From positions 185,854 to 249,853 of the IMG/VR virus record IMGVR_UViG_3300025000_000053: 64,000 bases of DNA. One strand, 5' to 3'. How positions within the stretch are numbered: the first letter of the stretch is position 1; each line of letters starts with the position of its first letter. Of this stretch, positions 17 to 62,102 are shown piece after piece. Below the pieces are notes generated by a model. The model worked only from the letters and a program-made list of their open reading frames with translations. It did no database searches and was not told where the DNA came from. The position numbers were made by a program, and so were the translations under genes.

Positions 17-3000
17 ATGTATATTACAGGTGGTGTTATTGATGTAGTTAGAAGGATTGGTGATAATACCTCTGACTTTACACAAAAACCAAAAGATGAT
101 AATAGAAGTAATATATTTGATAATTCAGATAATGTTGTTATGCCAGTAAGAGTAGATGGTGTTACTTCAGTTAGAATTGTTGGTTCGGATAGACCAATTC
201 CTATTTATTTTAATATGAATATGAATCAAAATCAACGTAGAAGTAATTCATTTAATAATAATATATCAGGATTGCCTAATTCAATTAATACGGGAAATAA
301 TAATTATTTAGTTTCTTCATTAACGAATGCACTTGATATATTTGATACAGAAAATGATAAAGAAGAAGAAAATAAACGAATAGAAAAAGAAAGAGAAAAA
401 GAATTATATCAAAACCAACTCGAAGTTTCTAAAAAAACATCAGGGTTCTTAATAGCTCAAAATAATTTAAGAAATGAAAAAGATTTTACTAGAAATAATG
501 AAATAAGACAGACATCATTATTGCAACAAATTGCAAATATATCAAAAAATCAACATGAAAGTTGGTTATCACTATTTGGTAAGAAAGGTATTTTAACAGT
601 TGCCTTTTTATTAACACTACCATATTTAGAAAAAATATTTAAATGGATTAAGGGATTTTTTGGTGGTGATGATGATACTGGTATTGGAGGTGGTATATCT
701 ACTGTTGTTAAAAAGGCATTAGGTTTAATAGAAAAAAACGATGGTAGTCGTAAAGATGCTGAAGATAAAGATATTATAAATGCTCAGGGTAGAGAAAGTT
801 ATATTAAAGGTACCGCTGTTTTAGCAAGAAGATATAGTCCTAAGTTAGTAAAAGCAATAGAAAAAGGTAAAGATAAAATAGCGAATTCTAATATTGTAAA
901 AAATGTTACTAGATATGGTTCAAATTTAAAAAATGCTTTTAATCCATCAAGTACTGTCAGAGGTGGAACTATTGATGCATCTTTCAAGGTTACTGATGAT
1001 ACTGGTAAAATAATTAAAGAAGTTACTGTAAATGATTCAAATAAAATTATTCAAGCTATTAAGAATACTTTTGAGAGATTTTTTAATAATTCATTTGTTA
1101 AGAAACTATTAGGTTCATCTGCTGGTAAAATAGCTAGTAAAATAATAAATGAAGTTACTAAAGTATTAAATTATAAGACTATGTTTAATAATATGGCTAA
1201 ATTATCAAAGGCTTTTTTAAGAACAGGTGTTATTATGTTTGCTGCCCCTGTAATAATATCTTGGGATTTAGCTACAGGTGCCTATGAAGCATCAAGAATA
1301 TTTAAAGTTGCAAATGAATCTGTTGATGGTAAAATGCAAATAGCTTCTTCTGTAACTAAAGCATTAATAGGATTCTTCCCAGTAATTGATATTTTATCAG
1401 AAATATTTAATGAGCAGACTGGTATGAGTTTAAAACAATATGTTGCAACAACTATTTATTCAATGTTAGCATCAACAGAAGAAATTAAAAAATTAGAAGT
1501 AGATAAAAAAGCTTTTGAGCAAGATAAAAATGAGTATAATGAAAAAAATAAAACTAAACTATCATTAAATGCATATAATGATATGAAAAATAAAACGTTC
1601 TTCCAGAAATTTATTAGTAATCCCTTATCAAAAACTAAAGATTTTATTGTGAAAACAGGAAGCAGTATCAGTAATAGTCTATCTGAAAATTGGGATAATT
1701 TTAAAGGTGGTTTTAGTAAAGGTTTTAAAATGATGGGTGATGATGTTTCTAATGCAATGTCTAAAACACCTGAAATGATTAAAACATTTAAGGATACATT
1801 ATCTAAAAATTGGAAAGAACTAAAAGATAATAGCGAAAAACAATGGAATAATATGAAAGGCTTTGTTTCTAAATCTTTAAAGGATACTAATAATACGTTG
1901 GGTATATTATTTGGATATAAAGATGAAGAAGGAAATGATGTTAGTTTTACAGAAGGATTTAATAAAGGATTTAAAGGACTTATAAAAAGCATTAGAGATA
2001 GTTGGAAAGATATTGGTGATGGTGCTAAATTTTATTGGGATAATACAAAAGCATTCACAGAAAGAAAATGGAAAGAATTAAGTGAGAAATTACCAAAGGC
2101 ATTTGAAAGTTTAGATAACTGGTTAGGTGAACTATTAGGATTTAAAGATAATGATGGTAATACATTATCTCTATCTGATTTTGCTAGTAAGCAATTTAAT
2201 ACTATTAAGAAATACTTATCCAATGGAAAAGGTTCATCGACATATTCTAGTGGAAAGGGTGGTAATGGAAACGGTGGGTTTGGTGAAGAACCTAATCAAC
2301 TTAATAATTTCACTTATTATTCACAATATGATGATAGATGGGGAAAAACAACATATGATTTAAGTAAAGGACATTCATCACAACCCACATTATCAGCCAG
2401 AGGTTGTGGTCCAACTTCTATGGCTATGGTTGTGAGTCAATTAACAGGTAAGAGATATGAACCACCTCAATTAGCTAAGATAGCTCAAGAAGGTGGATAC
2501 AGTACAAATGATGGAACAACCTGGGGATATTTTAATAAAGTTGCTAAAGATTTTAGTTTAGATACATCAACTGTTAATCCATCTAATACAATAAATTATC
2601 TTAATAATGGTATGCCTGTAATTCTATCTGGTAAAAGAGATAAATATTCATTTAATGATTCTCCATTTACGCCTGGTGGACATTATGTTGTTGCTGTTGG
2701 AAGAGATGAAAAGGGAAATATTTTAATAAATGATCCTAGAGGTTCTAAATTTTCTAAACCATATAATTATAATAAAGTAATTAAAGAAGCTCGACAAGGT
2801 TGGGCTTTTAGTTATAATGGTGGAATATTACCACCTAATATAGTTTCTTCTGATAATTCAAATAGTTCTAATAAAAAACTATCTACACTAGATTTATTTG
2901 CAAAAATGATAGAAGCATTTACATTATATGAGGAAAATAAAAGATTAGGGACAAATAAAAAATTATCATGGGATGATATTGAGGGTACTAGTAATGATTT

Positions 3001-4234
3001 TAATGTTTCAGTAACTACAACTAATGATTCTAATAGTTTAACTAATTTTGTACCTAAAACTTTACAAGAATCTATTTTAAAGAAAACATTAGAATTATCA
3101 ATAGGTTCAGAATCATCAGGTGATTATACTAGTTCTAATAATGATATTAATGCATCAACAGGCAAAAAAATTTCTCCATCAATAGGTATTTTACAATGGA
3201 GAGGTAATAATGCTAAAACTTTAATGCAAAAAATGTATGAACAACTACCTGGTAATAGTGAGGCGAATTATTTTGCCAATCAAGTAGATTGGGGTAATAA
3301 AAGTCCTTGGAATGATATTCAAAGAGCAAGATTGAAAAAATACCTTGGAGATAATTTAAGTGTAAGTCAAAAAGTTCAAAATGAAATGGCATTATCACAT
3401 ATTAGAGATACAAATTTAGCACCAGTTTATAAATATGGTGTTAATACCAATAAAATAAAAGATCCGAGATCAATAGCATTTCTTGCTGATTTTGCTAATA
3501 CAGGACCAGCTCTTGTTAAACCATTTTTAGATAAATATAATCCAAATAATGGTGGAAAACCTGAATTTGAACATTTTATGGATGAATTTAAGAATAAGAG
3601 TTATTGGGGTAATAAAGGGATTTATGCTAGTAGAATAAAAAACACTTATTCTAAATTATCTGGATGGACTCCTGAAGTTGGTGGTAATGGTAGTTTTAAT
3701 ATATCATCTAATTTTGATAAAACTGCTGGTGGTTTTGGTGGAGAAGAACAAATTATACTCAATAGTAATAAAATTAATTTAGAAAGATTTACAGGTGGAT
3801 TAGGTGATTTATCAACATCTATTTCTAATAAATATAAAGGTGAAAACCTCGGAATTAATCGTAATATATTTGAAAGTTTAAATAATGGAACAGGTGAATA
3901 TATTACTAATAATAGTAATAATACACAAAGTTCAAATATATCAATAAATGAAATTGTTACTGTTTTAAAAGAAATTGCAATAAATACTAACACTACATCA
4001 AAAGGTATTAATGAATTAACTAATAAAGAAATAATAATTAATGTAGAAAATAAACCAAGTATAAATGATAATAACCAAAATAATACTATTAATCTAAATT
4101 CACAACAACCTAAAAACGCAACATTTGTCAGTCCGTTTTTTCAATCTATGAATGAAAGAAGTAATACTGGAAATAGTAAGGAACAACGAGAATATACAAT
4201 AGCTAAAAAAATAGCCGGTGGGAGAGTTAATTAA
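17..4234 (+). CDS. Tail tape-measure / tail-associated lysin with C39-like peptidase and lysozyme-like domains (probably 5'-truncated by the window edge)
   Basis: Long helical Ala/Gly/Lys-rich region. C39-like motifs YYSQYDDRW..GCGPTSMAMV..GHYVV..INDP (about 2300-2820). Second domain GSESSGDY..SIGILQW (about 3060-3670). Frame is open upstream of position 17. Confidence 0.75.
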   Translation: MYITGGVIDVVRRIGDNTSDFTQKPKDDNRSNIFDNSDNVVMPVRVDGVTSVRIVGSDRPIPIYFNMNMNQNQRRSNSFNNNISGLPNSINTGNNNYLVSSLTNALDIFDTENDKEEENKRIEKEREKELYQNQLEVSKKTSGFLIAQNNLRNEKDFTRNNEIRQTSLLQQIANISKNQHESWLSLFGKKGILTVAFLLTLPYLEKIFKWIKGFFGGDDDTGIGGGISTVVKKALGLIEKNDGSRKDAEDKDIINAQGRESYIKGTAVLARRYSPKLVKAIEKGKDKIANSNIVKNVTRYGSNLKNAFNPSSTVRGGTIDASFKVTDDTGKIIKEVTVNDSNKIIQAIKNTFERFFNNSFVKKLLGSSAGKIASKIINEVTKVLNYKTMFNNMAKLSKAFLRTGVIMFAAPVIISWDLATGAYEASRIFKVANESVDGKMQIASSVTKALIGFFPVIDILSEIFNEQTGMSLKQYVATTIYSMLASTEEIKKLEVDKKAFEQDKNEYNEKNKTKLSLNAYNDMKNKTFFQKFISNPLSKTKDFIVKTGSSISNSLSENWDNFKGGFSKGFKMMGDDVSNAMSKTPEMIKTFKDTLSKNWKELKDNSEKQWNNMKGFVSKSLKDTNNTLGILFGYKDEEGNDVSFTEGFNKGFKGLIKSIRDSWKDIGDGAKFYWDNTKAFTERKWKELSEKLPKAFESLDNWLGELLGFKDNDGNTLSLSDFASKQFNTIKKYLSNGKGSSTYSSGKGGNGNGGFGEEPNQLNNFTYYSQYDDRWGKTTYDLSKGHSSQPTLSARGCGPTSMAMVVSQLTGKRYEPPQLAKIAQEGGYSTNDGTTWGYFNKVAKDFSLDTSTVNPSNTINYLNNGMPVILSGKRDKYSFNDSPFTPGGHYVVAVGRDEKGNILINDPRGSKFSKPYNYNKVIKEARQGWAFSYNGGILPPNIVSSDNSNSSNKKLSTLDLFAKMIEAFTLYEENKRLGTNKKLSWDDIEGTSNDFNVSVTTTNDSNSLTNFVPKTLQESILKKTLELSIGSESSGDYTSSNNDINASTGKKISPSIGILQWRGNNAKTLMQKMYEQLPGNSEANYFANQVDWGNKSPWNDIQRARLKKYLGDNLSVSQKVQNEMALSHIRDTNLAPVYKYGVNTNKIKDPRSIAFLADFANTGPALVKPFLDKYNPNNGGKPEFEHFMDEFKNKSYWGNKGIYASRIKNTYSKLSGWTPEVGGNGSFNISSNFDKTAGGFGGEEQIILNSNKINLERFTGGLGDLSTSISNKYKGENLGINRNIFESLNNGTGEYITNNSNNTQSSNISINEIVTVLKEIAINTNTTSKGINELTNKEIIINVENKPSINDNNQNNTINLNSQQPKNATFVSPFFQSMNERSNTGNSKEQREYTIAKKIAGGRVN

Positions 4235-40173: not shown

Positions 40174-40554
40174 ATGTTGAATGATATTATTTCTGTATTC
40201 AATCAGCTTACTCGTAATGAGTTGGCTGATTGTTCATTATTTGAAAATATTATTAATAGACATTATGAAAAATTTAAATATTTTTACTTTATTATAGATA
40301 ATATTAGCTTAAAGAATATAATAGACATTAAATGTCAGGAAGAATCAACACGATTAAATATTTCCATCTCATTTAAAACAAAAAAAGAAAGAGATTTATT
40401 TTTTAATATATTTAATAATAAGATTAATAATAATTGTAATTTTAAATATAAAGATTATTTTATTTTCAAAATTATAAAAGATACTAAATCTATTAATGTA
40501 ACAATAGAAAATAATGATATTATAGTAGAAGAGGTGTTGTATGGATGCAAATAG
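40174..40554 (+). CDS. Hypothetical protein
   Basis: Overlaps the start of the RNAP gene. Confidence 0.5.
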   Translation: MLNDIISVFNQLTRNELADCSLFENIINRHYEKFKYFYFIIDNISLKNIIDIKCQEESTRLNISISFKTKKERDLFFNIFNNKINNNCNFKYKDYFIFKIIKDTKSINVTIENNDIIVEEVLYGCK

Positions 40555-42803
40555 AACTCTTTGATACTAAGAAATTTATCGAAGTGAATAACTTAAGAGA
40601 GGTAACAAATTTAATATTATTTGAAAAAGGAAATATCCCAACTGTTGATGGTTTATTATCAACAGATATATTTGGGGTATCATCTAGAGAAAGAAAAGAA
40701 ACATATGCTTATATTGATTTACACGGACATTTCTTACATCCATTTATATTTAAGACATTAAAACGAATGAATAGAAAATTTGAATCTGCTATATATGGGA
40801 ATATAAATTTTATAATTAAAGATGGTGAATTAGTTGAAGATGAAAACGGAGAAAGTGGAATAGACTTTTTATATAAAAATTGGGAAAAATTTAATTTTGA
40901 ACGAAATAATAGTATGATGCGTAATGAAAGAATTTCTGTTTTAGAATCATATAAAAAAAATGTTTTATTTACTAAGTATTGGATTGTTATGCCAGCTTTT
41001 TTTAGAGATGTGAATTTACAATTTGCAGCTGAAGGAAGAGTATCTCACCATGAGATAAATGATAAATATTCTAAGTTAATTAGGTTTGCTTCTATAATTA
41101 TTAATAACAATTTTGATTTTGTTCTAAATACAACTAAAGCAAAAATTCAAGAAACTCTTGTTGAAATCTACGATTTACTTAAAGGTAAGATAGAAAAGAA
41201 ACAAGGGTTGATTCGTAAATCATTATTAGGTAAATCAATAGATTTTGGCGTTAGGAGTGTAAATTTACAATGCACGTGATTCTTTAATTGTCGGGGAAGC
41301 CCTTTAAATCTCTTACTACCAAACTATAATAGCAATATTATAGTGGCGAAGGGTAATGCCTTAGGTATGGTAACAAGGTAAGAAATTAGGTAATCCGCAG
41401 CTAAGATTCTAATATATTAATATTATTAGAATAAAGTTCAACGACTATCTGATGACGCTACTTTTAGTAGAGTAGGAGTAGACTCACAAGTCAATTAATG
41501 GTGAGTTGAAATGGGAAACCATCAAAAAGATGAAGATATAGTCTAGTATCCTAGTGAAAACTAGGGAAGTTCATTAGAGAACTGCATAGTCTGACGAACT
41601 ATGTGAATACAACGAATTTCTGCACCAATATTCAAAGCGAATAAATCAGAAGATATGAAAGTCGATTTTTATAATTGTGGTATACCATTATCACAATGCT
41701 GTTCATTATGCACACCATATATGATAACTTGGGTGAAAAGATTCTTTCAGAGGGAATTAGAAAGACTTTATATGAAATATCCGGTTAAATTAAAAACAGA
41801 AGAGATTATTTATGTTAAATTAAAATCACCTGAGTTATTTTTTAATGATGAATATATTGAAAAGCAAATTAATAAATTTATTTCTAGTTATGGTGATAGA
41901 TTTGAAAAAATCAAATTACCTATAGATGATCCTAAATATGAAAAAAATATTTATTTAAGTTTTATTGGAAGAGAATTTATTAAAGGTGTTCCAGAAACAG
42001 AATCACCTTTAATACAAAGACCTGCTACATGGTGTGATATTTTATATCAAGCAGCAGTTGAAATTACTTCTGATAAACATGTTTATGTAACACGATATCC
42101 TGTTTTAGATTATTTCGGTACTTTTCCTAATAAAATTCATGTTTTATCAACTCATGAAACTATTCCAATGTTTGTTGGTTCTAGGGTATATGAGCACTAC
42201 CCTAAAATAGATATTAAAATGCCTAAAGAAAAAGTTTCTATTACCTTTGCTGATACAGTAACAATGTCAAACCTGTATTTAACAGGTCTTGGTGGAGACT
42301 ACGATGGTTCTTTAAATGCCCACTTATATGGTGACATATATGTGAATCTTCTTTAATTGTCGGGGAGGCTCTTAGAGCTTTTTATTATATAATAAAAAGA
42401 TTGGGTAATCCGCAGCTAAGATTCTAATATATTAATAATATATTAGAATAAAGTTCAACGACTATCCCTAGGTACTGAAATGTACAACAGGAGTAGGGCT
42501 CAAGTGAGTGGGTGAAAATCCCTTAAATCGAAATAGGAAGCACCTCCTATAAGGTGATGATATAGTCTAGTATCCTAGTGAAAGCTAGGGAAGTTCATAA
42601 GAGAACTGCATAGAATAACGACCTATGTGAATATATCGGATCAAGTATCTTTAAAGGTTTTATTTTCACAAGAAGCTAATCTTGAGGCAGATAGAATTAT
42701 GAAATCAAAAGGTCATATTCTTAATATCTATGGACAAAATATGAGAAAGACAACAAATGAAGGTGCTCATACTTTATTTATGTTAACAAAGTTTAATAAA
42801 TAA
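40545..42803 (+). CDS. rpoC: RNA polymerase beta' N-terminal subunit (probably virion RNAP), spliced from exons 40545-41260, 41615-42308, 42639-42803 (524 aa)
   Basis: GLIRKSLLGKSIDFGVRS-V-ISAP and GGDYDG-DQV are restored only after removing two group I introns. Frames checked; stop codon at 42801-42803. Confidence 0.85.
41261..41614 (+). mobile_element. Group I intron 1 (354 nt, ORF-less)
   Basis: P aattgtcgggga, Q aatccgcagc, R gttcaacgacta, S aagatatagtct. P1 gugu|a pairs with ugcac, giving a U.G pair at the splice site. Terminal G at 41614. Confidence 0.9.
42309..42638 (+). mobile_element. Group I intron 2 (330 nt, ORF-less), inside the catalytic DYDG/D motif
   Basis: P/Q/R/S elements present. 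The exon ends in U (ggt), the intron ends in G, and splicing restores DYDGD. Confidence 0.9.
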
Positions 42804-56069: not shown

Positions 56070-58351
56070 TTATATTTTTAGAATATTACTATAGTAATCA
56101 TCTTCAGTTGTCTTAATAATTCCAATACCCAAACTATCTAATACACCATGGAACGTAGATAAATTATTATTTATAATTGTACTATAATCAATAAAAGGAA
56201 TTATCCAATTTGGTATCTTAGGTATATTTCTAGGCAAAGCTATAACTTTAACTCCTTTCTCTCTTATTTTCTTATCACTATTATTATATATATTTTCAAT
56301 TATCCTTTCATATATTTCAGGCTCAGATTGTTTTATTTTTTCAATAGAGTTTTCATCCATATTAACCTTAATAATATCAATGTGTTCAGGTAGTTCTATT
56401 GAATTATCAGGATAAGCATAATTCCATGCTAAAACAGCACGGACACCCATTTCTCTTAATGGATCTTTATATGCTTCTAATTCTTTTACTGATTTAGGAA
56501 TTAGAAAATCTTTTTGACCTGATTCTAGAGATATTCTAATTATATTTTCTAATTTTTCTAATTCTTTTAAAACATTAGATATATTAATTTCTTCAGTTGA
56601 TAATAAATGTTCTTTAATAAGATTTTTAAAGAATTTTTCTGTTGCTTCTCTTGTTGATGACTTAACAAAATCTAACGTAGTGTTCACATAGGTCGTTAAT
56701 CTATGCAGTTCTCTTATGAACTTCCCTAAGTTTCCCTAGGATACCAGACTATATCTTCATCCTTATTATATAACTAATAAGGAGCCTCCCATTTCGATTT
56801 AAGGGATTTTCACCCACTCACTTGAGCCCTACTCCTATTGATCATTTCAGATCCAAAGGGATAGTCGTTGAACCTTTCTCTTATATTAGAGACTTGGCTG
56901 CTGATTACCCAATATTTTAGTTTATTACCTTTATCTTAAGGTACTAAAATCTATAAGGATTTTCCAGCAGTTAAAGAGGTTTTCTTTATATATTACTATA
57001 TAAAGGAGCAATATTTATTACCCTTAATATCAACTTTTTCAGGATATATTTCATCTCCTTCTCTTAATCTAACACTACTTATATATCTTTTCTTTTTCTG
57101 TGTTAAAATAAGTCTAGTGAATAAAAATTCATTTTTCATATTTATTTTATGTCTATATCTTTTAGGTATATTTACATCTTTAGTATATTTCTTCAATGTA
57201 TTAGTAACCATATTAGTTATTATATAAGCCAATAAGTTGATAGAAATAAATTTTAATTCAGTTTTATCCTTATTTATTAATTTATCATTAACATCGATAA
57301 TATTATATTTAATAAATTTAACCCATTTATCAATAGTCATAATAGTTGAATCTGTATCTGAACCAACTACAGTTTTTCTTTCATCATATTTTAATCTACG
57401 AATCCTATTATATGGAGAAAAATTAAAGAAAACAAATTCTTTATATAGTTTCCATAATAGTTCTAAATCATCTTTTACGTTATTAGGTATCTTATTAGGA
57501 TTTTTAAATGTATCAATATTTTCTATAATATATGATAATAAGTTTCTTATTTTTCTTAATTTTGAAAATTCAAAAATGTTATTCTTATAGTAAATTCTAT
57601 TAATATCTTTTTGACTTAAAGATAATAAATAATTTAAAATAAAAGAATTATACTCTTTTTTATAATTAAAAAATCTTTTCTTTAAATATTTCATTAATTG
57701 TTTTGAACTAATATTTTCTAAAAAATTATCATTTAAATTTCTTTTTTCCTTAATTACATTAGTTAAAAAAAACACACATTCTTCAAGATTATTAAATGGA
57801 GCATTATTTTCTAAAAAAGTTTCAAAAGCCATTTCAGCTGTAGCTATTAATGATTGGCCGGAGTTTGTAATAGAACTGGCGGTGTATAAATTATAAAAAT
57901 TAGATGTTGGGGCTCCGTTGGACCCGAAGAACGAGTTTGCGTTGGTTTTCTCAGAACCTTGTAACCTATCAAATGTCCCATATTCATAATCATCTTTTGA
58001 ATATTTTTTTAATTGATTTTTATACTCTTTTCTTAACGACATAAAGTTTTCTAGCATAACAGCGGCTGGATTCAATGATTCATCTTGATTTTTAAAAAAT
58101 ACTCCGAATCCAGCAACTATAGGTTTAGTTTTTTTAACCCAATCATATACTGATATTAAATCTACATTAATAGATTTATGAATATAGTTATTATGAATTA
58201 TAGCTTTAGGGTTAATTAAGTTTTTATCTATAATATCATCTAAAACTTTTGATATATCTTTATTTGTTAGTTCAGGATACATTCTTTTAAATATCTCTAT
58301 ATTACTTTCTTTCCAATCTTTTATAAATAAACTTTTAATTTTTTTAGATAT
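56070..58351 (-). CDS. polB: Family B DNA polymerase, C-terminal polypeptide of a split enzyme; exons 58351(or 58282)-57020 and 56675-56070
   Basis: EKTNANSFFG (motif B), GSDTDS (motif C), KKRY, and DIKG-LDFVKSST restored after splicing. Motif A (DxxSLYP) is absent. Confidence 0.85.
56676..57019 (-). mobile_element. Group I intron 3 (344 nt, ORF-less) in the DNA polymerase gene
   Basis: On the minus strand: P aactgctggaaa, Q aatcagcagc, R gttcaacgacta, S aagatatagtct. The exon ends ggt and the intron ends in G; frame restored. Confidence 0.9.
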
Positions 58352-59064: not shown

Positions 59065-62000
59065 ATGTTATTGGAAAATAATATAAAAGAAATTATTGGT
59101 TTATTAAGTAACAAAGTATTTATTATTTCAGAAATAATGGAAACTAGAAAAACTTTTAATGAGAATCTAGAGACAATTTATGATTATTTAAAACAAGGTT
59201 TTGAAATTAAAGAATTAAGAACATGTCCAACTTACTTTAGATTTAAAGAAGATGGTTATATACACACTTTACAATTAAGACATTTTCTTACCAACTTGAT
59301 GTTTTGGGAACCATTAATGAGATTTGATTGTTCAGATAAGTTAGATGAAACTTATATTGTTGATTGTACTAAAATGTCATCTAAATTAATTAAAAATTAT
59401 ATTGATAATAAAATTGTTATACCTTATAGAAGAATAATCGAAAATAAGAAAATGAATAAAGTTATTCATGATATGATTTATAATCTATCAAGAATATCAA
59501 CAGATTTTAATATTATATTAGGATTGTCTATTAATGTTGAGACATTTATTGATGTTGCAAAAAGAAATCCAAGATTTAATGAGATTATTAGGACTCAATT
59601 AAATGAAGATATGCAACCAACTGAGATTGAGGAATATTTAGATAAATTGATGCATGAACAAATAGAAATCTTAAAAAATGATGATAAAGATAATTTATTA
59701 AAACCAATACTTAAATCAGGTGCTGGTATTAAAAGTAAACAATTGTCAGAATTCTCAATATCTGGCGGGTTAAAAATTAGCCCCGTACATAGGCGACTAT
59801 GTGCGTAAACCTCTTTAATTGCTGGGACTCTCTTAAAATATTCTTCTACCAGAATATTAATAAAAGTTGGTGTTGATATTGAAGCTAGTTAATATCGATT
59901 ATGATAAAAAGAAGAAGTTATATATAGTTACCTTTTTTAAAAATAAGGGTGGTTATAAAATAAGAACTAAAAGATTTACTTATTCTGAAGATAGTCATGG
60001 ACCTTTCGCTAGGATTCTTGCTTTACATACAATGAAGACAGGTGAGAGACTTTATCATTGGTTTGTGACTGACGGTATATATACATCTATTTTTATATAT
60101 AATAAAAAATATGGTTTTAGACGTATGTTAATCGATAATGAATTTATTGACATCGTCAAAAATCATAGGATTAATATAATTAAAAATAAAACTGGTCAGA
60201 ATATATTTTATGCGACAATAAAAATAAACGGTAAGAATGTCCCTGTACATCGTCTTATTATGGGTCTAGGAGAATATAGAAATGATCCTGTAGATCATGT
60301 ATTTCATGATTCTTTAGATAATATGAAATTAAATCTACGTGTCTGTACTCCTAGTATTAATAATAGGAATTCAAGATTACGATGTGACAGTAAAACTGGT
60401 ATACAGGGAGTTTGTTTTAATAAAAATAAATGCTCGTATACCGCAGAAGTTAGAGATTTTAATGGTAGAAAAATTAGAAAAAGCTTTCCCATAAAACTTT
60501 ATGGTGAAAATAAAGCCATTGAATTAGCAAAACAATGGCGTGAAATTATGGTAGAAGAATATTATGAGAGACAATCAGCAGCGAAGCCTGATTATTAGTC
60601 AGGAACGTTCAACGACTATCCAAAGCATGTTCATTATTGATATAAAATATAATGAACATAAGCGAGTAGAGTAGGACTAGAAGCTAATGCTAGTTCCAAA
60701 CGGGAGGCATCTCACTGAGATGATGATATAGTCTAGTATCCTAAAGTGATTTAGGGAAGTTCATAAGAGAACTGTATAGGGGTTGCGTCCTATATGAATG
60801 ATCGTAAAACCAAATATTTCTGGTACTACTATCCCTATACCTATTAATAGTAATTATATCGTAGGTGGATTGAGGAATATAACTAATTATTATATAGATT
60901 CTCTCGGTGGTCGCAAATCATTGATTATGAGTAAGCTTGAGATGGGAAATTCTGGGCATTTCGCACGTACTGTGATGCTATTAGTTTCCAGTATTAATTT
61001 ATCTAAAACAGTCGAATCATGTAATACTGTACATCCAATAAAAATTGAATTAACAACTAAAGACCATTTAATAAGAATGCGGGGTAGATATTATCGAACC
61101 ATGTATTCTAGAAATTATCAATTATTAAAAGGTGATGAATATAATTTAATAGGGGAAACTATTTTTGTTAAATCACCAGTTACTTGTGCTTGTAAAGATG
61201 GGATATGTAAAATGTGTTATGGTGAATTATCATATATAAATAATGATATTTCAATAGGTGTATATGCTGGTACAAAAATCACAGAACCAGTTTCACAAAA
61301 TATTTTATCCTCTAAACATTTATTAACAACTAAATCAGAAAAAATACAATTTAATGAAGAATTCTATAGATTTTTTAATATAAGTGGTAATGAAATAATT
61401 ATTAATCCAAATGATGATTTAGATAATTTAGATGATTATAGTTTACTTATAATTAAAAGTAATATTAAAACAATAGCTGATTATGATGATAATGATATGG
61501 AATTTAATGAATATGTAAATCTATTCCATGTATATAATAAGAAAACTAATGAGATGATAGAAATAAAAGAAAGTAGAGATAAAGATTTATATATCTCTCC
61601 TGAATTAAGAAAATTATTTAAGAAAAAAAGTAAAAAGGAAGTTTATGAAATTGATTTTAAAAATATTGATGATGATAGAATTTTTGTTATAGAAGTAGTT
61701 AATAATGAGTTAACCCGTCCACTATATGATATTATGCGTTTAATTGATAGGGTTGACTATAGAATCATACATTGGAACTGTGTTACAATTGATCAAATGT
61801 GTCAAAAGATGTTAGATTTAATAATAGAGTCTGAAATTAATTCTGACTCTGTTCATGGTGAATTAATTTTAACACCATTATTAAGAGATAAAGATGATAT
61901 ATTAGAAAGACCTAAATTTAATAAGTACTTTAATGGTGATGAAGGATACCAAATTCTAACAGTTAAATCTGCTTTAGAAAAACATCCATCAGTATTAGTT

Positions 62001-62102
62001 GGTTTATCATTCCAAGCACTTGATAGACAATTAACAAACCCATTAACATTTAGAAAAAAGGAAAGTTCATTTATTGATCCTTTCTTTAAAGAAAGACCAT
62101 AA
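59065..62102 (+). CDS. rpoC: RNA polymerase beta' C-terminal subunit (probably non-virion RNAP), exons 59065-59770 and 60805-62102 (667 aa)
   Basis: Splicing gives GGL-KPNISG. Bridge-helix-like GL..YY..GGRKSL..SGHFAR and Zn site SPVTC..ICKMCYG are present. Confidence 0.8.
59771..60804 (+). mobile_element. Group I intron 4 (1034 nt) carrying a homing endonuclease
   Basis: P1 gggu|u pairs with agccc (U.G at the junction). P aattgctggga, Q aatcagcagc, R gttcaacgacta, S gatatagtct; terminal G at 60804. Confidence 0.9.
59867..60598 (+). CDS. Intron-encoded HNH homing endonuclease with AP2-like DNA-binding domain(s)
   Basis: VHRLIM..VDHVFHDSLDN..NLR (HNH); SKTGIQGVCF..YTA..KSF..YG..AIELA (AP2). 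Confidence 0.85.
   Translation: MVLILKLVNIDYDKKKKLYIVTFFKNKGGYKIRTKRFTYSEDSHGPFARILALHTMKTGERLYHWFVTDGIYTSIFIYNKKYGFRRMLIDNEFIDIVKNHRINIIKNKTGQNIFYATIKINGKNVPVHRLIMGLGEYRNDPVDHVFHDSLDNMKLNLRVCTPSINNRNSRLRCDSKTGIQGVCFNKNKCSYTAEVRDFNGRKIRKSFPIKLYGENKAIELAKQWREIMVEEYYERQSAAKPDY

What the first reader, a model, noticed from the sequence alone, without database searches (positions are those of the whole stretch)
42404..42534. Intron 2 looks like a mosaic of introns 1 and 3
Seen: 42404-42466 is nearly identical to intron 1 at 41389-41449 (ggtaatccgcagctaagattctaatatattaat..tattagaataaagttcaacgactatc). 42489-42534 is a 46-nt exact match to intron 3 at 56791-56836 in reverse complement (aggagtagggctcaagtgagtgggtgaaaatcccttaaatcgaaat), a stretch not shared with intron 1. 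Inference: recombination or gene conversion among ribozyme copies shuffles structural domains; the copies could also mediate genome rearrangement.
Basis: seen in the sequence. Interest (0 to 1): 0.65.

Follow-up and report, generated by a model that had tools for sequence, protein, structure and literature searches.

The report
Shuffled group I introns, jumbo phage
[quoted passage not shown] Its 46-base match to intron 3 is the family-wide conserved P7.1-P7.2 domain, not a piece taken from intron 3, although the copies do appear to swap hairpin cassettes.

Summary
Both sequence matches are real: 46/46 exact to intron 3, and 61/63 to intron 1. The reading "intron 2 = intron 1 x intron 3" does not hold.

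**The 46-nt block.** It is the P7.1-P7.2 peripheral domain. It is identical in at least 12 other intron copies of this phage group. It is 78-96% conserved in 163 phage records (Staphylococcus K-like, Enterococcus, Vibrio, AR9, SPbeta).

**Intron 1 is the odd one out.** Its same-site counterpart in a sister strain carries the block at 43/46. In the window strain that segment has been replaced by the type found in a RecA-like gene's intron.

**The 63-nt block.** About 26 nt are core sequence conserved across the family. Only the P6 hairpin is specific to introns 1 and 2, with a 34-nt exact run. An AU test rejects introns 1 and 2 as sisters over the 5' half (p=1.6e-4).

**The general idea is supported.** PHI p<=2e-4, and 66% of informative site pairs are incompatible. 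Intron 1 shares a 214-nt exact tract with an intron in a different gene, and segment trees conflict.

This is a natural example of a known kind. From memory, intron domain shuffling was shown in phage T4. All sequences come from metagenome assemblies, and no reads were checked.

The parts
42309..42638 (+). Intron 2. ORF-less group I intron of 330 nt. It splits the catalytic DxDGD motif of an RNA polymerase beta'-like gene (GGDYDG | DQVS).
   Evidence: RF00028 76.4 bits. Relatives L007/L008/L011 have the exons contiguous at exactly this junction. The 5' exon ends in U and the intron ends in G.
42404..42466 (+).
   Evidence: Helix map. P4 and J6/7-P7 are conserved or invariant in 24 copies. The P6 hairpin is nearest to intron 1 (4/40 differences; the next best copy has 10/40). 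The 34-nt exact run 42404-42437 occurs only in intron 1 and the L039 copy. P6 has no homologue in the phage database.
42489..42534 (+). It contains two small hairpins, 42498-42509 and 42510-42522. It is the family consensus sequence.
   Evidence: Position from the Rfam alignment. Hairpins are supported by compensatory changes. Identical in 7 of 23 aligned copies. Exact in 22 loci. 78-96% identical in 163 phage records.
41261..41614 (+). Intron 1. ORF-less group I intron of 354 nt in the same RNA polymerase gene (..GVRSV | ISAP..). It has a long P5 extension and a variant, partly deleted P7.1-P7.2.
   Evidence: RF00028 57.1 bits. The junction is confirmed by intron-less relatives and by PHROG profile continuity, 8-250 then 252-487. 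Compared with its same-site ortholog, the middle segment is 47% identical against 88-91% in the flanks.
41282..41495 (+). A 214-nt tract of intron 1 (P3 through P7.1) that is identical to an intron in a RecA/KaiC-like gene of contig IMGVR_UViG_3300025000_000078 (L039, about 3510-3889, minus strand).
   Evidence: Longest exact match. The host gene has Pfam KaiC/RecA hits. The surrounding genome is only 75-83% identical to the sister strain. Trees: the L039 copy groups with intron 1 in the left half; in the right half it and intron 1 sit together with S0850, its own-site ortholog.
56676..57019 (-). Intron 3. ORF-less group I intron of 344 nt in a divergent family B DNA polymerase gene (exons 58282-57020 and 56675-56070).
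   Evidence: RF00028 87.9 bits. The site is empty in the sister strain (L043), which gives the boundaries. Pfam PF20286/PF00136 on both exons.
59771..60804 (+). Intron 4. Family intron of 1034 nt carrying an HNH+AP2 homing-endonuclease ORF (59867-60598). It lies in an RNA polymerase beta'-C-like gene (exons 59065-59770 and 60805-62102).
   Evidence: nhmmer/blast hits to the family core. The site is empty in the sister strain (L038). ORF: PF00847 and phrog_99. Host gene: phrog_3015.
40545..42803 (+). RNA polymerase beta'-N-like gene in three exons: 40545-41260, 41615-42308 and 42639-42803.
   Evidence: phrog_2986 matches both large exons. The KQGxxRxxLLGKxxDFxxRSV and DYDGD motifs are read from the sequence. 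Exon tblastn to relatives.

Best explanation
**What intron 2 is.** It is an ORF-less, phage-type (IA2-like) group I intron. It belongs to a multi-copy family in an uncultured, AT-rich jumbo phage related to AR9 and PALS_2. I found 14 family hits on the source contig and 10 on a 95-kb sister contig.

**The 46-nt match to intron 3.** This is the family-wide P7.1-P7.2 peripheral domain, kept nearly invariant by purifying selection on ribozyme structure. It carries no information about exchange with intron 3.

**The 63-nt match to intron 1.** It is partly core sequence conserved across the family (P4 3' strand, J6/7-P7). The rest is a P6 hairpin variant shared only by introns 1 and 2, which lie 1 kb apart in one gene, and by one intron in a RecA-like gene.

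**How the family evolves (inferred).** Copies exchange short patches by gene conversion. The conserved core stretches act as homology anchors, so whole hairpins (P5 extension, P6, P7.1-P7.2, P8, P9, P9.1) move as intact cassettes and pairing is preserved.

**What this means for the triplet.**
- Intron 2 probably gained or shares its P6 cassette, and perhaps P9, through exchange with intron 1.
- The segment where introns 1 and 2 disagree reflects a replacement in intron 1. It now carries the RecA-gene intron type with a hairpin deleted. Intron 2 did not import that segment.

**Shown versus inferred.** Shown: the sequence patterns, the structure conservation and the phylogenetic conflict. Inferred: the mechanism (short-patch conversion during phage recombination or co-infection), the direction of each event, and self-splicing activity.
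For: **The block is the family consensus.**
- Identical in 7 of 23 other aligned copies and exact in 22 loci.
- At least 19 locus copies match intron 2 over runs as long as or longer than intron 3's.
- 163 phage records hold it: Vibrio JA-1/VCO139 95.7%, Enterococcus 94-97%, Staphylococcus K lysK intron 87%, AR9 83%, SPbeta bnrdF 78%.

**Structure.** 93.9% of cells are paired, against 47% or less when partners are slid. 32 pairs show compensatory change.

**Intron 1 is the changed one.**
- Its same-site ortholog carries the block at 43/46.
- Identity to that ortholog is 88% (P3-P6), 47% (P7.1-P7.2) and 91% (3' part).
- The clade (i1, ortholog) is not rejected on the left (p=0.20) but is rejected on the right (p=0.004).

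**Reticulation in the family.**
- PHI z=-4 to -9, p<=2e-4, also after dropping the 3' strands of helices.
- 944 of 6070 triplets at p<=0.004.
- Module incompatibilities.
- Exact tracts of 214, 112 and 96 nt between introns at different sites, with different partners for different segments.
- Three introns are 100% identical between the two strains, while the intron 2 alleles are about 81% identical and differ hairpin by hairpin.

**P6.** The 34-nt run is exclusive to intron 1, intron 2 and the L039 copy.
Against: - All sequences are metagenome assemblies, and no reads could be mapped.
- A scan of the metagenome collection for an intron-2-specific 46-mer found only the source contig, so intron 2 has no independent assembly.
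- The source contig is itself an over-length join of two strains.
- PHI and triplet tests assume independent sites. Lineage-specific bursts in single hairpins can mimic breakpoints.
- The P6 extension shared by introns 1 and 2 is AT-rich and palindromic. Part of it could arise by slippage.
- Neither splicing nor the direction of any transfer was shown.
Confidence: 0.75

Rival explanations
1. Intron 2 arose by recombination between intron 1 (donor of the 5' part, P4-P7) and intron 3 (donor of the P7.1-P7.2 part).
For: The three-sequence test is significant: 74 informative sites, maximum descent 33, p<5e-5, with clustered 1-like and 3-like runs. The 46/46 and 61/63 matches are real.
Against: - 23 other parent pairs give the same p for intron 2.
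- The block is shared exactly with about 12 other copies.
- Intron 3's sister in the right half is S040k, support 95/89.
- The clade (i1, i2) is rejected for the left half, p=1.6e-4. Intron 2's P3-P5 belongs to the short-P5 group (0-1 differences), while intron 1 differs at 8/33 and 67/74 positions.
Confidence: 0.04
2. No exchange at all. The copies diverged vertically after ancient duplications. The shared blocks reflect purifying selection, and the conflicts reflect convergent or compensatory evolution and uneven rates in hairpins.
For: The cores and the 46-nt block are indeed under strong constraint. Hairpin-local bursts can produce false triplet signals.
Against: - Multi-nucleotide hairpin alleles occur in all four combinations.
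- Exact tracts of 96-214 nt join introns in different genes, while flanking genomes are 75-90% identical.
- Same-site introns in two strains differ cassette by cassette, and each cassette is found in another paralog.
- AU tests reject a single topology.
- PHI stays significant after removing the paired partners.
Confidence: 0.07
3. Assembly artefact. The mosaics come from de Bruijn graph paths crossing between repeated intron cores, or between co-occurring strains.
For: - The source contig is over-length. It joins two strains and starts 4 nt before an intron core.
- Several contigs end inside introns.
- Intron 2's specific sequence is seen in only one assembly.
Against: - Flanking exons are correct and in frame for every window intron.
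- Intron 2's P6, P7.1 hairpin and P8 are not copies of any other assembled sequence.
- Several mosaic introns, such as the sister allele of intron 2 and the ortholog of intron 1, are identical in assemblies from two different samples.
- All copies keep compensated helices.
Confidence: 0.1

Closest known systems
Domain shuffling between the td, nrdB and sunY group I introns of phage T4 (Bryk & Belfort, Nature 1990). Recalled from memory; the paper is not in the searchable library.
   Same: Recombination occurs at short conserved core elements shared by different introns of one phage genome. It yields chimeric introns whose domains come from different parents.
   Different: In T4 the events were selected in the laboratory among three introns, and they rearranged the genome. 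Here the evidence is comparative, involves 10 or more natural copies, the exchanged units are single hairpins, and gene order is unchanged.
Multi-intron genes of Staphylococcus phage Twort and K-like phages: orf142 with three introns, nrdE, and the lysK intron with I-KsaI. The Twort papers are cited in PMC3073962 and PMC3984707.
   Same: The intron type is the same. Intron 2 aligns at 72-79% over 160-200 nt with K-like, PALS_2 and MarsHill introns, and the P7.1-P7.2 block is 87% identical. Both have several related introns in one gene, short exons, and HNH endonuclease ORFs in some copies.
   Different: The host genes differ (RNA polymerase, DNA polymerase B, RecA-like). The copy number per genome is larger, and the phage is an uncultured jumbo phage with 24% G+C.
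Bacillus jumbo phages AR9/PBS1, with intron-rich RNA polymerase genes.
   Same: Multisubunit RNA polymerase genes are split by several group I introns. AR9_g189 is annotated as joined from 6 pieces, with an HNH-AP2 endonuclease (g190) inside. AR9 holds the block at 83% in 4 places.
   Different: Only the introns are similar at the DNA level; there is no near match of the exons. Mosaic exchange among the AR9 copies was not examined here.

Membership tests
Group I catalytic intron (Rfam RF00028) | Covariance-model score at or above the curated gathering score (50 bits) | tested here: met
   Intron 1 57.1 bits and intron 2 76.4 bits. Intron 3 87.9 bits. Intron 4 was not detected as a whole because of its 0.7-kb ORF insert; its core was found by nhmmer.
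Group I catalytic intron (Rfam RF00028) | Conserved P3-P9 core helices maintained by compensatory changes | tested here: met
   64 pairs in 14 helices, 93.9% of cells paired against 35-47% when slid, and 32 pairs with changes on both sides. P4, P7 and P9.0 are invariant.
Group I catalytic intron (Rfam RF00028) | Precise interruption of a gene, with exons contiguous in intron-less homologues, U before the 5' splice site and G as the last intron base | tested here: met
   Intron-less alleles in L007/L008/L011 (sites 1 and 2), L043 (site 3) and L038 (site 4). Terminal bases read.
Group I catalytic intron (Rfam RF00028) | Guanosine-dependent self-splicing | not testable with these tools
   Needs an in vitro transcription and splicing assay.
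Phage-type subgroup IA2 | Extra P7.1/P7.2 hairpins between P7 and the 3' strand of P3 | tested here: met
   The 70-nt insert at that position in the Rfam alignment holds three small hairpins with covariation.
Phage-type subgroup IA2 | Assignment by subgroup-specific models (GISSD), or homology to classified IA2 introns | tested here: inconclusive
   There is DNA homology to introns of K-like, Twort-like, SPbeta and AR9 phages. PMC11878797 notes that phage introns are traditionally put in IA2 but that the subgroup is heterogeneous. No subgroup models were available.
   AU test rejects clade (i1, i2) for P3-P7, p=1.6e-4. Only the P6 hairpin is intron-1-like.
   The block is identical in 7 of 23 copies. 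Intron 3 pairs with S040k (95/89). The clade (i2, i3) is neither supported nor rejected, p=0.29.
Intron families evolving by inter-copy gene conversion (T4-like domain shuffling) | Different segments of one intron have different closest relatives among paralogs, beyond what one tree allows | tested here: met
   PHI p<=2e-4. AU rejections in opposite halves. Exact tracts of 214, 112 and 96 nt with different partners.
Intron families evolving by inter-copy gene conversion (T4-like domain shuffling) | Chimeric junctions confirmed in the DNA molecules (reads or clones) | not testable with these tools
   No read data. The metagenome scan found only the source contig.

The most novel reading that the evidence does not exclude
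A family of ten or more ribozymes inside one jumbo-phage genome evolves in concert by cassette exchange. Intact hairpin modules move between introns lodged in different essential genes (RNA polymerase, DNA polymerase, RecA-like). The invariant catalytic core serves as the recombination anchor. ORF-less introns could thereby be repaired, homogenised or diversified without any homing endonuclease of their own.
Probability: 0.45. Interest if true: 0.55.

Novelty: new member of a known kind. Interest (0 to 1): 0.38.

Why it matters
- **Correction.** An exact repeat between two ribozymes can be plain structural conservation. The apparent "recombinant" in a three-way comparison may be the unchanged copy.
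- **What the dataset offers.** It is a natural, many-copy example of hairpin-level exchange among phage group I introns. It could be used to study how ORF-less introns persist, how far ribozyme peripheral domains are interchangeable, and how repeated intron cores break or mis-join metagenome assemblies of jumbo phages.
- **What it does not do.** It does not open a new class of system.

Tried and rejected
- **Whole-window Rfam scans.** Both the gathering and the E-value scan missed introns 3 and 4. A targeted scan recovered intron 3.
- **Full-length covariance model.** I did not build one, because calibrating a model of about 330 positions would exceed the limit. I used nhmmer segment profiles and MAFFT instead.
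- **Triplet script.** The first version timed out and was rerun vectorised.
- **AR9 hit under intron 3.** I first took it to mean an RNA polymerase beta host gene. Pfam shows a family B DNA polymerase, and the AR9 similarity lies in the intron.
- **RNAalifold helix.** It proposed a helix CUAUC/GAGUAG that conflicts with P7. The helix is invariant and therefore unsupported, so I replaced it with the canonical P7 pseudoknot.
- **Literature.** Searches did not find the T4 shuffling paper, and the Twort papers PMC22036 and PMC113830 are not held.
- **Metagenome scan.** The scan for an independent copy of intron 2 returned only the source contig.
- **Pfam on the RNA polymerase exons.** No hits; PHROGs identified them.
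- **Breakpoints versus core stretches.** I did not test rigorously whether breakpoints coincide with core stretches. Exact tracts end in variable hairpins by construction.

Full report
**1. The observation**

- The 46 bases at 42489-42534 equal the reverse complement of 56791-56836 exactly. The match stops at both ends.
- Allowing three mismatches, the 46-mer occurs only at these two places in the window. It never occurred in 100 shuffles.
- 42404-42466 and 41389-41449 are identical apart from two one-base gaps.
- Rfam RF00028 (group I intron) scores 57.1 bits at 41199-41566 and 76.4 bits at 42299-42590.
- The minus-strand copy was lost by the filters in the whole-window scans. It scores 87.9 bits in a targeted scan.

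**2. Anatomy and context**

The window has 24% G+C. It is the last 64 kb of the 249,853-bp contig IMGVR_UViG_3300025000_000053, also known as Ga0209318_1000017.

Introns 1 and 2:
- Intron 1 is 41261-41614 and intron 2 is 42309-42638.
- Both lie in one gene whose exons match phrog_2986 ("RNA polymerase beta subunit") at profile positions 8-250 and 252-487.
- The sequence shows beta'-type motifs. Intron 2 sits inside the catalytic motif (GGDYDG | DQV).
- Relatives at about 70% protein identity (L007, L008, L011) have the three exons contiguous, which fixes both junctions.

Intron 3:
- It is 56676-57019 on the minus strand.
- It lies in a divergent family B DNA polymerase gene (PF20286, PF00136).
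- Its site is empty in a sister strain.

Intron 4:
- This fourth family member is at 59771-60804.
- It carries an HNH+AP2 endonuclease ORF and lies in a second RNA polymerase subunit gene.

**3. A large family**

- A 27-mer from the block occurs 11 times on the source contig alone.
- Segment profiles find 14 family hits on that contig and 10 on the 95-kb sister contig 3300025010_000040.
- In the GenBank phage collection, 262 records hold similar introns. They include Staphylococcus K-like, Twort-like, PALS_2 and MarsHill phages, AR9/PBS1, and Lactococcus and Vibrio phages.
- An alignment of 24 ORF-less copies supports a canonical structure: P3-P9 with the P7 pseudoknot, plus P7.1/P7.2, P9.0 and P9.1.
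- In that structure 93.9% of cells are paired, against 47% or less when partners are slid. Thirty-two pairs show compensatory change.

**4. What the two blocks are**

*Block B (42489-42534).*
- It lies between P7 and the 3' strand of P3, so it is the P7.1-P7.2 peripheral domain.
- It is identical in 7 of the other 23 aligned copies and exact in 22 fetched loci, about 12 further intron sites.
- At least 19 locus copies share exact runs with intron 2 of 46-57 nt there. Intron 3 is therefore not distinguished.
- Outside this phage group, 163 phage records cover at least 80% of a 57-nt query across the block. Identities: 95.7% in Vibrio phages JA-1, VCO139 and JSF3; 94-97% in an Enterococcus phage nrdF intron; 87% in the phage K lysK intron; 83% in AR9; 78% in SPbeta bnrdF.

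*Block A (42404-42466).*
- It is the 3' strand of P4 (conserved family-wide), then the P6 hairpin, then the nearly invariant J6/7-P7 stretch.
- Only P6 is informative. Intron 1 is the nearest copy at 4/40 differences, and the next best copy has 10/40.
- A 34-nt exact run is shared only with intron 1 and one intron that is itself identical to intron 1 there.
- P6 has no homologue in the phage database.

**5. Is intron 2 a 1 x 3 recombinant?**

Taken alone, the triplet looks significant: 74 informative sites and p<5e-5. Several results remove the specific claim:
- 23 other parent pairs give the same p for intron 2, and 944 of 6070 triplets in the family reach p<=0.004.
- Maximum-likelihood trees reject (intron 1, intron 2) as a clade for the left half, P3-P7 (AU p=1.6e-4). 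Intron 2 sits in the group with a short P5, at 0-1 differences from five copies.
- In the right half intron 3 pairs with copy S040k (95/89), and intron 2 is unresolved.

The long "3-like" run comes from intron 1:
- Its same-site ortholog in the sister strain carries the block at 43/46.
- Intron 1 matches that ortholog at 88% (P3-P6) and 91% (3' part), but only 47% in P7.1-P7.2.
- In P7.1-P7.2 it instead resembles the intron of a RecA-like gene, with a hairpin deleted.
- The clade (intron 1, ortholog) is acceptable on the left (p=0.20) and rejected on the right (p=0.004).

**6. Does the family exchange segments?**

Yes, as far as sequence comparison can show.
- **PHI test.** It gives p<=2e-4 with z from -4 to -9. 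It stays significant after removing the 3' strand of every helix. Of informative site pairs, 66% are incompatible.
- **Hairpin alleles.** Treated as multi-nucleotide alleles, hairpins occur in conflicting combinations.
- **The 214-nt tract.** Intron 1 shares a 214-nt exact tract (41282-41495) with an intron in a RecA/KaiC-like gene on contig 3300025000_000078. That contig is only 75-83% identical to the sister strain around the intron. The intron's P1-P2 and 3' third are of the local type.
- **Copy S092k.** It shares 112 nt exactly with the sister allele of intron 2, 96 nt with S0853 and 64 nt with a third copy, over different segments.
- **Between strains.** Three introns are 100% identical between the two strains. 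The two alleles of intron 2 are about 81% identical and differ hairpin by hairpin, and each alternative hairpin is found in another paralog.

I infer short-patch gene conversion anchored in the conserved core stretches. Such conversion moves both strands of a hairpin together and so keeps the ribozyme foldable. This mechanism is inferred, not shown.

**7. Caveats**

- Everything rests on metagenome assemblies.
- The first 21 kb of the source contig is a 77-89% diverged, collinear copy of its last 21.6 kb, and is identical to the sister contig. The contig is therefore an over-length join of two strains, and it begins 4 nt before an intron core.
- An intron-2-specific 46-mer was found only in the source contig.
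- Against an artefact: the exons are correct and in frame. Intron 2's distinctive hairpins match no other assembled sequence. Several mosaic introns recur identically in two samples.
- Gene order is collinear between the strains, so there is no sign of intron-mediated rearrangement.

**8. Comparison with what is known**

- The intron type is the phage IA2-like class known from Twort, K, SPbeta and AR9. AR9's RNA polymerase gene g189 is annotated in six pieces with an HNH-AP2 endonuclease inside.
- Recombinational shuffling of domains between T4 introns was reported by Bryk and Belfort in 1990. I recall this from memory; the paper is not in the library.
- Reviews consulted (PMC3984707, PMC3073962, PMC11878797, PMC12908238) describe phage group I introns, their preference for active-site codons, and homing. 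None of my term searches in them found inter-intron cassette exchange.

**9. Verdict**

- The specific interpretation, intron 2 as a mosaic of introns 1 and 3, is not supported.
- The general idea of domain shuffling among copies is supported by comparative evidence.
- This is a new member of a known kind and is moderately interesting.

Noticed in passing
window 59771-60804 (+): A fourth family intron the finding did not mention. It is 1034 nt with an HNH+AP2 homing-endonuclease ORF (59867-60598), in an RNA polymerase beta'-C-like gene. The sister strain lacks it but has a different endonuclease-bearing intron about 100 nt downstream (window site 60904/60905). That is an arrangement of alternative neighbouring introns.
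   Followed up: partly
window 42401-64000, versus loci L047 and L038 (contig positions 1-27356): The start of the source contig is a collinear, 77-89% diverged copy of its end, and is identical to another sample's contig. The 249,853-bp contig is probably an over-length co-assembly of two strains. It starts 4 nt before an intron core.
   Followed up: partly
L005 3636-4029: In the sister strain the DxDGD motif is cut twice. An unrelated, G+C-richer element with a weak group I match (20.5 bits, E=0.009) follows GGD. Then comes a 9-nt micro-exon TATGATGGT (YDG), and then the ortholog of intron 2.
   Followed up: partly
L072 about 2135-3830 (contig IMGVR_UViG_3300001041_000047): Five family introns lie within about 1.3 kb, 280-360 nt apart, which implies very short exons between them.
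   Followed up: no
L039 3510-4290 (-), and L031 24-704 (-): A RecA/KaiC-like ATPase gene carries two family introns separated by a micro-exon of about 25 nt (GGNAPKF). The second intron is the one sharing 214 nt with window intron 1.
   Followed up: partly
window 56676-57019 (-): The whole-window Rfam scans, at the gathering threshold and at E<=1, missed this intron entirely. A 4.4-kb targeted scan scored it at 87.9 bits, so filter losses matter in this AT-rich sequence.
   Followed up: yes
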